Sequence record: MH383160.1
Direction: 5' to 3' (one strand)
DNA length: 64,000 nucleotides
In this document: one piece after another, positions 33,294 through 33,461 of the stretch
Numbering within the stretch: the stretch's first letter is position 1
Layout: each line of letters opens with the position of its first letter
Notes under the pieces: model-generated
What the model saw: the letters and a program-made list of their open reading frames with translations, nothing else
Database searches by the model: none
What the model was told of the DNA's origin: nothing
Made by a program: the position numbers and the translations under genes

Positions 33294-33461
33294 TTATACA
33301 TGTGGGACAAACATAATGATGTGTGTTTGGACAACTCTAGTGCCATCACTTAAGATTATACCATTATCACAAACATCAATCACAGTACCCGTTACCTTTA
33401 CACCACCAGTAAGATAAAAATCATATATAACGTTAGCATCTATTGTAAAAATATCTTTCAT
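33294..33461 (-). CDS. Hfq/Sm-like RNA-binding protein (55 aa, not in the ORF track)
   Basis: hand-translated [55 protein letters not shown]; aligns with Hfq [23 protein letters not shown]...MVYKHAISTVVP; fills the intergenic gap. Confidence 0.65.

What the first reader, a model, noticed from the sequence alone, without database searches (positions are those of the whole stretch)
33294..33461. Unannotated minimal Hfq/Sm-like gene downstream of nrdB
A 55-codon ORF below the track cut-off fills the gap exactly. [25 protein letters not shown] matches Sm1 of Hfq ([25 protein letters not shown]) and [12 protein letters not shown] matches Sm2 (QMVYKHAISTVVP). The His is retained but YKH becomes QTH and the N-terminal Arg-rich helix is absent. 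Inference: a phage RNA chaperone, or a dominant-negative subunit that poisons host Hfq hexamers and sRNA regulation. I know of few characterised Hfq homologues in lytic jumbo phages.
Basis: partly seen in the sequence, partly recalled or inferred. Interest (0 to 1): 0.75.

Follow-up and report, generated by a model that had tools for sequence, protein, structure and literature searches.

The report
Minimal acidic Hfq-fold phage protein
The 55-codon gene after nrdB is real and conserved in Rak2-like jumbo phages, and it is predicted with high confidence to fold like the bacterial RNA chaperone Hfq, but it lacks Hfq's RNA-binding residues and is acidic, so it probably does a different job.

Summary
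The window is from an Asteriusvirus (PBECO4/121Q/UB-type jumbo coliphage). The ORF at 33294-33461 (-) exists as described. It is a genuine gene: it keeps its place after nrdB in every relative examined, down to about 30% identity, and dN/dS is 0.14-0.38. It is not universally unannotated. PBECO4 RefSeq calls it a "membrane protein" (phrog_17251), a label that hydropathy does not support. The fold claim holds. The AlphaFold2 model has pLDDT 92.5 and five strands. All 50 top Foldseek matches in the PDB are Hfq (rmsd about 0.9 Å over 47 columns, 26-33% identity). A profile-profile comparison with Hfq scores 29.0, against 9.7 ± 1.9 for shuffled controls. The functional claim is weak. There is no N-terminal helix. 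YKH aligns with VQT (PTD in most relatives). The "retained" His is present in only 5 of 42 members. The aromatic F42 position is Asn or an invariant Gly. All 42 members are acidic (pI 4.1-6.0), whereas enterobacterial Hfq has a pI of about 10. No Pfam or NCBIfam model matches. I read it as a new phage family with the Sm/Hfq fold. It probably forms a ring or acts as an adaptor through protein contacts, and the conserved basic-tailed neighbour is the leading candidate partner. Its function remains untested.

The parts
33294..33461 (-). Gene X: 55-codon ORF plus stop, encoding a helix-less, acidic Sm/Hfq-fold protein (phrog_17251; PBECO4 gp470)
33469..33473 (-). Weak Shine-Dalgarno-like TGGGT, 8 nt before the ATG. 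Relatives have GGAG or GGA at the same place.
33474..33499 (-). Terminator-like hairpin (8-bp stem AGGGATTC/GAATCCCT at 33481-33499) followed by TTTTCTT, between the nrdB stop and X. The structure is kept in 17 of 18 loci, with at least 7 different stem sequences.
33512..34636 (-). nrdB (class Ia RNR small subunit), the upstream neighbour
34691..37009 (-). nrdA (class Ia RNR large subunit)
32998..33231 (-). Gene Y: a conserved 77-aa partner candidate (phrog_16437; the longest ORF starts at 33261). It has an acidic helical N-part and a long basic helix ending in NRK. It is always adjacent to X.
32592..32996 (-). 134-aa 'virion structural protein' homologue (phrog_16130), same transcription direction
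31861..32598 (-). MazG/PRA-PH-like nucleotide pyrophosphohydrolase, the last gene of the run
31828..31856 (.). Strong bidirectional terminator-like hairpin (13-bp stem) that closes the X-Y-structural-MazG run

Best explanation
X is a genuine protein-coding gene, specific to Rak2-like jumbo phages. Its product is a bare five-stranded Sm/Hfq-type beta-barrel, probably derived from or sharing ancestry with Hfq. It has lost the N-terminal helix, the uridine pocket, the arginine rim and the positive charge that make Hfq an RNA matchmaker.

Shown or computed:
- the gene is real, conserved and syntenic;
- it is under purifying selection;
- the Hfq-like fold is predicted with confidence;
- the Sm1 hallmark residues are kept (beta2 Gly25 in 41 of 42 members, loop-3 Asp32 in 35 of 42);
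- the Hfq RNA-contact residues are not conserved;
- the family is uniformly acidic.

Inferred:
- Like nearly all stand-alone Sm domains, it assembles edge-to-edge (beta4-beta5') into a small ring or oligomer.
- It works through protein contacts as an acidic adaptor or chaperone, not as a general U/A-rich RNA chaperone.
- The most plausible partner is the strictly co-occurring, much better conserved neighbour Y, whose long Lys/Arg-rich helix would complement X's negative surface.
- The X-Y-structural protein-MazG run is expressed by read-through of, or processing at, the conserved hairpin after nrdB.
For: - Gene reality.
- Fold: AF2 pLDDT 92.5, pTM 0.74, strands 12-17, 22-31, 34-37, 42-44 and 48-53, with a 3-10 turn at 45-47. 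Foldseek against the PDB puts Hfq in all of the top 50, with TMq 0.71-0.80 and rmsd 0.9-2 Å in nearly all.
- Sequence link to Hfq Sm1: hhalign probability 81%, P = 1.2e-5, about 10 sd above shuffled controls. Weak Hfq and Edc3-LSm hits recur in PDB profile searches.
- Loss of Hfq function sites and acidity: per-column counts and pI 4.07-5.97, with no member net positive, against pI of about 10 for enterobacterial Hfq cores. Alignment.
- No TM helix: maximum KD19 is 1.52 or less.
- X-Y pairing: adjacent in every locus examined. Y is 70% column-identical and is predicted as a helical hairpin with a long basic helix.
- The N-terminal helix is dispensable for Sm folds and rings (PMC3710371).
Against: - No oligomer model, binding assay or expression data could be obtained here, so ring formation and the X-Y interaction are pure inference.
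- These genomes are largely collinear, so adjacency of X and Y is weak evidence of partnership.
- Most family members have Pro at the end of beta4 (HIPTD), which could weaken canonical beta4-beta5' ring pairing.
- Related T4 LSm-like proteins gave no confident homo-oligomer models in AlphaFold3 (PMC12152347).
- An acidic Sm protein can still bind RNA in its pore. The S. aureus Hfq core is also mildly acidic (pI 5.6).
- The Foldseek E-values are only about 3e-3, because the domain is short.
Confidence: 0.45

Rival explanations
1. X is a true phage RNA chaperone. A homo-hexameric (or pentameric or heptameric) ring binds phage or host RNAs in its pore or on its faces and promotes annealing or stabilises transcripts, as Hfq does.
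For: Hfq is the nearest structural neighbour. There is significant Sm1 profile similarity. The window copy keeps the distal-face identities Y16, G20 and K22, equivalent to Hfq Y25, G29 and K31. Polar or basic residues are conserved in loop 5 (T/Q45, K/H47) and His/Arg42. T4 GoF(D25Y), another phage LSm-like protein, stabilises an mRNA (PMC12152347).
Against: The F42 equivalent is Asn or an invariant Gly. YKH becomes VQT or PTD. There is no Q8 helix and no arginine rim. Y16 and K22 are not conserved (10 and 13 of 42). All 42 members are acidic. No Hfq or LSM HMM matches.
Confidence: 0.13
2. X is an Hfq poison or decoy. It co-assembles with host Hfq subunits through the shared beta4/beta5 edges, or it mimics Hfq towards Hfq's protein partners. 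Either way it disables sRNA regulation during takeover.
For: The backbone match to E. coli Hfq is very close (rmsd 0.9 Å). In the E. coli and Klebsiella-infecting clades the beta4-beta5 segment (RVVQxHIIMFVP) resembles Hfq QMVYKHAISTVVP more than it does in other clades. An acidic subunit inserted into a basic ring would be disruptive.
Against: The Hfq-like beta4-beta5 sequence is clade-specific. Most of the family has HIPTDKI with a Pro. The N-terminal helix that contributes to the Hfq subunit interface is missing. No interaction data exist. Hosts of the family span many genera that have nearly identical Hfq, while X diverges to 30% identity.
Confidence: 0.08
3. X is a phage-encoded stand-in for the structural role that host Hfq plays in T4. 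It would be a transient ring that plugs or stabilises the neck (gp13/gp14-type) complex, or another assembly intermediate, and is then expelled, so it is absent from virions.
For: T4 recruits the host Hfq hexamer as a second genome gate on gp14 and ejects it when the tail joins (PMC12929587). Rak2-like phages are distant T4 relatives (PMC5259590). X sits in a run with a gene labelled 'virion structural protein', and two more such genes lie just beyond. X itself is not labelled structural in any of the records examined.
Against: In T4 the Hfq face that docks on gp14 is positive and gp14 is negative, whereas X is acidic. The contact residues K31, Q33, T49, S65 and R19 are not conserved in the family. 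No late-promoter motif lies upstream. The immediate context, nrdAB and MazG, is nucleotide metabolism.
Confidence: 0.07
4. X is a monomeric small beta-barrel adaptor of the SH3/Sm type that binds a short peptide motif or a small ligand. One example would be an accessory factor of the phage ribonucleotide reductase or dNTP-synthesis complex encoded next to it.
For: X is invariably adjacent to nrdB. Small beta-barrels are frequent protein-protein modules; the Edc3 LSm domain appears among the weak PDB hits. The N-terminal DIFTFD motif (F5 in 41 of 42) is conserved and could cap the barrel in place of a neighbouring subunit. Pro in beta4 argues against ring pairing.
Against: A conserved terminator-like hairpin separates X from nrdB. 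No known RNR accessory protein (YfaE, NrdI, NrdH) has this fold, and no Cys or metal ligands are conserved. Both faces of beta5 are conserved hydrophobic (I48, V/L49, Y/F50, F51), which suggests a buried interface.
Confidence: 0.15
5. X is not a functional gene but a chance ORF in an intergenic spacer.
For: It is only 55 codons. It is omitted by several annotators. The SD in the window copy is weak.
Against: The frame is conserved across genera to about 30% identity. dN/dS is 0.14-0.38. The HMM family comprises about 22 clusters at 50% identity, and the fold prediction is confident.
Confidence: 0.02

Closest known systems
Bacterial Hfq (Pfam PF17209; e.g. E. coli Hfq, PDB 1HK9/4PNO)
   Same: Both have a five-stranded, strongly bent Sm barrel with short loops. 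Hfq supplies the best 50 structural matches (rmsd about 0.9 Å over 47 columns, 26-33% identity). The Sm1 pattern hxhxLxxGxxhxGxh...D is shared, with significant profile similarity. The hydrophobic beta5 ends in Pro.
   Different: X has no N-terminal alpha-helix (Q8) and no R16/R17/R19 rim. The F42 position is Asn or Gly. YKH becomes VQT or PTD. X has one extra residue in the beta2-beta3 hairpin and two fewer in loop 4. It has no C-terminal tail in this clade. It is acidic rather than basic. No Hfq HMM matches.
Sm-like pentamer of putative cyanophage origin (Das et al. 2009, cited in PMC3710371)
   Same: It is a virus-associated, stand-alone Sm-fold protein that lacks the N-terminal helix and has no known function.
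   Different: That protein has a C-terminal helix and is a proven pentamer. X has no helix, and its oligomeric state is unknown.
T4 GoF / MotB.1 / Frd.2 LSm-like fold family (PMC12152347)
   Same: They are small phage proteins from T4-related myoviruses with a predicted five-stranded LSm-like barrel and no N-terminal helix. Frd.2 also lies in the nucleotide-metabolism gene cluster. They are non-essential and their function is unresolved.
   Different: Those proteins are 119-141 aa with an added C-terminal domain, and their nearest structural neighbours are FeoA/SH3-like. hhalign of the X family against each of them gives background scores of 8-13, against 29 for Hfq. X is a bare 55-aa barrel.
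Host Hfq as transient neck plug in T4 assembly (PMC12929587)
   Same: An Hfq-fold ring is used by a T4-type phage for a non-RNA, structural purpose. This shows that the fold can serve protein-protein roles in this phage lineage.
   Different: In T4 the ring is the host protein, it is basic, and it docks on an acidic gp14 surface. X is phage-encoded and acidic, and nothing links it to the neck.

Membership tests
Sm/LSm fold superfamily | [quoted passage not shown] | tested here: met
   The AF2 model has pLDDT 92.5, strands 12-17, 22-31, 34-37, 42-44 and 48-53, and a 3-10 turn at 45-47. The top 50 PDB matches are all Hfq. This is a prediction, not an experimental structure.
Sm/LSm fold superfamily | Sm1 hallmark residues: the beta2 Gly and the loop-3 Asp (PMC3710371) | tested here: met
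   G25 is present in 41 of 42 members and D32 in 35 of 42. They align to Hfq G34, and to D40 (gapped) or Q41 (ungapped).
Sm/LSm fold superfamily | Significant sequence or profile similarity to a recognised Sm family | tested here: inconclusive
   hhalign against Hfq gives probability 81%, P = 1.2e-5, about 10 sd above shuffles, but over the Sm1 region only. A 4-sequence Hfq profile gives probability 40%. HMMER against the PDB gives E = 0.4-1.4. Pfam and NCBIfam give no hit.
Sm/LSm fold superfamily | Assembly into a cyclic oligomer through beta4-beta5' pairing | not testable with these tools
   No multimer prediction was available. Both faces of beta5 are conserved hydrophobic, which favours an interface. 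Pro44 is present in 36 of 42 members, which argues against pairing.
Hfq (PF17209) | Match to the curated Hfq HMM | tested here: not met
   No Pfam family matched at E ≤ 10, either for the window protein or for 13 homologues. NCBIfam gave none.
Hfq (PF17209) | N-terminal alpha-helix carrying Q8 and followed by the basic rim (R16, R17, R19) | tested here: not met
   Residues 1-11 are coil in the model. There are no Arg or Lys residues in that segment beyond K2. The family is acidic.
Hfq (PF17209) | Sm2 motif [YF]KHAI with K56 and H57 forming the uridine/3'-OH pocket | tested here: not met
   With beta5 and Pro in register, YKH aligns with V44-Q45-T46 (family P-T-D). H47 aligns with A58 and occurs in only 5 of 42 members. 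BLASTP's alternative register pairs H47 with H57, but the residue is still not conserved.
Hfq (PF17209) | Aromatic F/Y42 and Q41 in loop 3 that stack on uridine | tested here: not met
   The position is occupied by N33 or by the invariant G34 of a tight D-N-G turn.
Hfq (PF17209) | Distal-face A-R-N site (Y25, G29, I30, K31) | tested here: inconclusive
   The window copy has Y16, G20, V21 and K22 at these positions. In the family, Y16 occurs in 10 of 42 members, G20 in 33 of 42 and K22 in 13 of 42.
Hfq (PF17209) | Homo-hexamer; RNA annealing or chaperone activity | not testable with these tools
   This requires SEC-MALS or native MS, EMSA, and complementation of E. coli K-12 Δhfq.
T4 GoF/MotB.1/Frd.2 LSm-like family | Detectable sequence-profile relationship, and the N-terminal barrel plus C-terminal domain architecture | tested here: not met
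   hhalign scores of 8.2-12.9 equal the shuffled background. X is 55 aa and has no C-terminal domain.
Membrane protein (the label in RefSeq/PHROG phrog_17251) | A hydrophobic transmembrane helix | tested here: not met
   The maximum Kyte-Doolittle 19-residue mean is 0.37-1.52 in 13 homologues, below the usual threshold of about 1.6. The model is an all-beta soluble barrel. The label traces back to TMHMM screening (PMC5259590).

The most novel reading that the evidence does not exclude
Rak2-like jumbo phages carry their own stripped-down, charge-reversed Hfq-fold ring. It acts on the Hfq axis of the infected cell in one of two ways. It may be a subunit poison or decoy that switches off host sRNA regulation. 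Alternatively, it may be a phage-encoded replacement for the structural 'second genome gate' role that T4 fills with host Hfq.
Probability: 0.15. Interest if true: 0.8.

Novelty: new member of a known kind. Interest (0 to 1): 0.45.

Why it matters
Canonical Hfq is almost absent from phage genomes. It hits 7 of 50,697 records, and at least four of those lie on bacterial DNA. A conserved Hfq-fold protein in a whole clade of about 350-kb phages that infect E. coli, Klebsiella, Salmonella, Erwinia and Serratia is therefore a useful new entry in the small list of viral Sm-fold proteins. It corrects a misleading 'membrane protein' annotation that has propagated through RefSeq and PHROGs. It also offers a very small (55 aa), experimentally tractable Sm barrel that has shed every known RNA-contact residue. 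That makes it a natural test of what the fold does without them. If it turns out to touch host Hfq, sRNA regulation or neck assembly, it would connect to the recent finding that T4 co-opts Hfq structurally.

Tried and rejected
1. Pfam, NCBIfam and PDB sequence searches gave nothing significant, either with the single protein or with profiles.
2. An exhaustive HMM search of 1.84 billion representatives found only about 22 small homologues. The long hits are Big_6/Flg_new_2 repeat proteins and were rejected as compositional.
3. The 'membrane protein' reading was rejected on hydropathy and on the model.
4. A relationship to T4 GoF/MotB.1/Frd.2, or to the small T4 ORFs around nrdA/nrdB/frd, was rejected because the hhalign scores are at background.
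5. A YfaE-like ferredoxin or other RNR accessory protein was rejected because no Cys or metal ligands are conserved.
6. A search for an own promoter found no enrichment. Sigma-70-like hits are no more frequent than in shuffles, the CBB 'TGAAACG' motif is absent nearby, and there is no TATAAATA motif nearby.
7. RNAalifold on the nrdB-X spacer failed because the stems do not align. Folding each sequence separately showed the hairpin.
8. Neighbour Y has no Pfam, PDB or Foldseek relative.
I rebuilt the alignment from accepted proteins.
10. The genome-contig scan for Hfq returned only gammaproteobacterial Hfq, so the Hfq profile is less diverse than I wanted.
11. Rfam and tRNA scans of the window found nothing.

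Full report
**Identity of the window.** Bases 32500-34700 are 100% identical to Escherichia phages UB and PBECO4, and 99.5% or more identical to a further 17 records, including SP27 and G17. The window therefore comes from an Asteriusvirus, one of the roughly 350-kb 'Rak2-like' jumbo myoviruses that are distantly related to T4 (PMC5259590).

**The observation.**
- The ORF exists exactly as described, at 33461 down to 33294 on the minus strand. It encodes 55 aa, [55 protein letters not shown].
- It follows nrdA (34691-37009) and nrdB (33512-34636).
- It precedes a 77/87-aa ORF (called Y here), a 134-aa 'virion structural protein' homologue and a MazG-like pyrophosphohydrolase. A strong bidirectional terminator at 31828-31856 closes the run.
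- It is not universally unannotated. PBECO4 RefSeq lists it as YP_009150784.1 'membrane protein', and it matches phrog_17251 at E = 1e-31. G17, slurp01, phAPEC6 and RaK2 omit it.

**Is it a gene?** Yes.
- tblastn finds it in 71 phage records, all Rak2-like (Asteriusvirus, Alcyoneusvirus, Eneladusvirus, Mimasvirus and unclassified relatives), at identities from 100% down to about 33%.
- In 13 annotated loci, 13 IMG/VR loci and 5 metagenomic contigs that carry the most distant members, it always occupies the same slot: nrdB-X-Y.
- Nei-Gojobori dN/dS between pairs with unsaturated dS is 0.14-0.38.
- A GGAG, GGA or GGG motif sits 7-9 nt before the ATG in all relatives.
- Between the nrdB stop and this motif there is a GC-rich hairpin plus U-tract in 17 of 18 loci, built from at least seven unrelated stem sequences (G17 annotates it as a terminator). 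The structure is therefore itself selected.
- A word-indexed search of 5.8 billion proteins found 41 homologues of 53-95 aa.
- An exhaustive HMM scan of 1.84 billion representatives found about 22 genuine clusters. The long hits are repeat-rich surface proteins and are spurious.
- The family is therefore narrow and confined to this phage clade.

**What is it?**
- No Pfam or NCBIfam model matches.
- Profile searches of PDB sequences give only E = 0.15-1.4. However, Hfq and the Edc3 LSm domain recur among the ten or so hits.
- AlphaFold2 with the 42-sequence alignment gives a confident model: pLDDT 92.5, pTM 0.74. It has five strands (12-17, 22-31, 34-37, 42-44, 48-53), a 3-10 turn at 45-47 and no helix.
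- Foldseek against the PDB returns Hfq for every one of the top 50 places. TMq is 0.71-0.80, rmsd is typically 0.9 Å over 47 columns, identity is 26-33%, probability is 1.00 and E is about 3e-3.
- In BFVD the best match is the CBB homologue (labelled 'putative membrane protein'), followed by unnamed small phage proteins.
- At sequence level, BLASTP against enterobacterial Hfq gives 36% identity over 39 residues, E = 0.008.
- hhalign of the family against a 4-sequence Hfq profile gives probability 40%, P = 2.9e-4.
- Against a 64-sequence profile it gives score 29.0, probability 81%, P = 1.2e-5. Two hundred column-shuffled templates score 9.7 ± 1.9 (maximum 16.4), and the reversed template scores 6.7.
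- The two residues that Mura et al. single out as Sm hallmarks, the beta2 Gly and the loop-3 Asp, are G25 (41 of 42) and D32 (35 of 42).
- The absence of the N-terminal helix does not disqualify an Sm fold (PMC3710371).
- I conclude that the Sm/Hfq-like fold is well supported and that common ancestry with Hfq is likely.

**Does it work like Hfq?** The evidence leans against it.
- With beta5 and its terminal Pro in register, Hfq Y55-K56-H57-A58-I59 aligns with V44-Q45-T46-H47-I48. This is the hhalign MAC alignment, and it agrees with the secondary-structure register and the h-x4-h-x2-h periodicity.
In any register, His is present in only 5 of 42 members. Most of the family reads H-I-P-T-D-K-I.
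- The stacking aromatic F42 is replaced by the N33-G34 turn, and G34 is invariant.
- The Q8 helix and the R16/R17/R19 rim are absent.
- The distal-face identities that make the window copy look so Hfq-like (Y16, K22) are present in only 10 and 13 of the 42 members.
- Every member is acidic. The pI range is 4.07-5.97, the median net charge is -5, and none is net positive. Enterobacterial Hfq cores have pI of about 10.
- The residues that are conserved (F5, Y13, L17, G25, G34, I48, F51) are core or turn positions, plus an N-terminal DIFTFD motif.
- The 'membrane protein' label fails. The hydropathy maximum is 1.52 or less and the model is a soluble beta-barrel. The label derives from TMHMM screening.

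**Context and likely mechanism.**
- Y is always adjacent to X, is far better conserved (70% column identity) and is predicted as a helical hairpin whose second helix (27-76) ends in a long Lys/Arg-rich stretch. It has no known relatives.
- An acidic Sm-type barrel next to a basic-helix protein suggests a complementary pair.
- I therefore favour X as an oligomeric, or at least protein-binding, Sm-fold adaptor or chaperone rather than an RNA matchmaker. This step is inferred, not shown, and collinearity of these genomes weakens the adjacency argument.

**Rival explanations.** Four rivals remain open, and I score each individually in the rival explanations:
- a true RNA chaperone;
- an Hfq poison or decoy;
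- a phage-encoded analogue of the transient neck plug that T4 makes from host Hfq (PMC12929587);
- a monomeric adaptor linked to the RNR/dNTP machinery.

**Comparison with what is known.**
- Canonical Hfq is almost absent from phages. Only 7 of 50,697 records hit. Two are Salmonella enterica contigs by their own titles, and miaA-hfq context was confirmed for the Salmonella and Acinetobacter records that were opened. Two unverified 'Staphylococcus phage' records carry a 77-aa Hfq that matches S. aureus Hfq as I recall it. One unverified faecal contig carries an 85-aa Hfq.
- Viral proteins with an Sm fold are nevertheless described. [quoted passage not shown] The others are the T4 GoF/MotB.1/Frd.2 LSm-like family (PMC12152347).
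- X shows no profile similarity to the T4 family (scores 8-13). It differs in being a bare 55-aa barrel whose nearest neighbour is Hfq itself.
- I found no paper that describes this family as Sm- or Hfq-like.

**Verdict.** The functional inference is unproven, and the sequence evidence counts partly against it. I rate this a new member (a separate family) of the known kind 'phage-encoded Sm-fold proteins of unknown function'. Interest is moderate. It would rise sharply if X proved to engage host Hfq or virion assembly.

Noticed in passing
window 31164-31824 (+): This is a homologue of the intact ~219-aa 'virion structural protein' of phages Turkey5, K64-1 and BF. Here it is split by a frameshift near 31446-31452 into overlapping 105-aa and 159-aa ORFs. 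The same gene is annotated in pieces in A4, CMSTMSU and PBECO4. It could be a pseudogene, a shared sequencing artefact or a programmed frameshift.
   Followed up: partly
window 32998-33231 (-) (longest ORF from 33261): Gene Y (phrog_16437) encodes 77 aa with 70% column identity across genera. AF2 predicts a helical hairpin with a long Lys/Arg-rich helix ending in NRK. It has no Pfam, PDB or Foldseek relative. It is always adjacent to X.
   Followed up: partly
window 33474-33499 (-) and 34666-34685 (-): Terminator-like hairpins follow both nrdB and nrdA. The one after nrdB is kept in 17 of 18 related loci with at least 7 different stem sequences and sits directly against the SD of the next gene. 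This suggests attenuation or an RNA-stability or processing element rather than a full stop.
   Followed up: partly
L008, L009, L012, L014, L117 (between nrdA and nrdB): Several relatives carry an extra 230-257-aa ORF between nrdA and nrdB. It is annotated as an endonuclease in GAP32. In fHe-Yen9-04 another insert splits nrdB. The window has no such insert.
   Followed up: no
'phages' collection: AFYI01000007.1, AGRM01000005.1, CAKLQH020000029.1, OR844988.1: Records filed as phages look like bacterial DNA that carries host hfq. The two Salmonella records are titled as S. enterica contigs. miaA-hfq context was seen in AFYI01000007.1 and CAKLQH020000029.1. OR844988.1 carries a 77-aa Hfq that matches S. 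aureus Hfq as recalled. They would inflate any count of 'phage-encoded Hfq'.
   Followed up: yes
L019 3001-3258 (MT835489.1, unverified faecal 'Bacteriophage sp.' contig, 63 kb): It encodes an 85-aa canonical Hfq with an intact YKHAIST motif (47% identity to E. coli Hfq). I did not check whether the contig is truly viral.
   Followed up: no
window 30467-31147 (+) and 31164-31824 (+): The two adjacent plus-strand genes share a motif (VLVYKFVPD...). They look like paralogues with an N-terminal hydrophobic segment.
   Followed up: no
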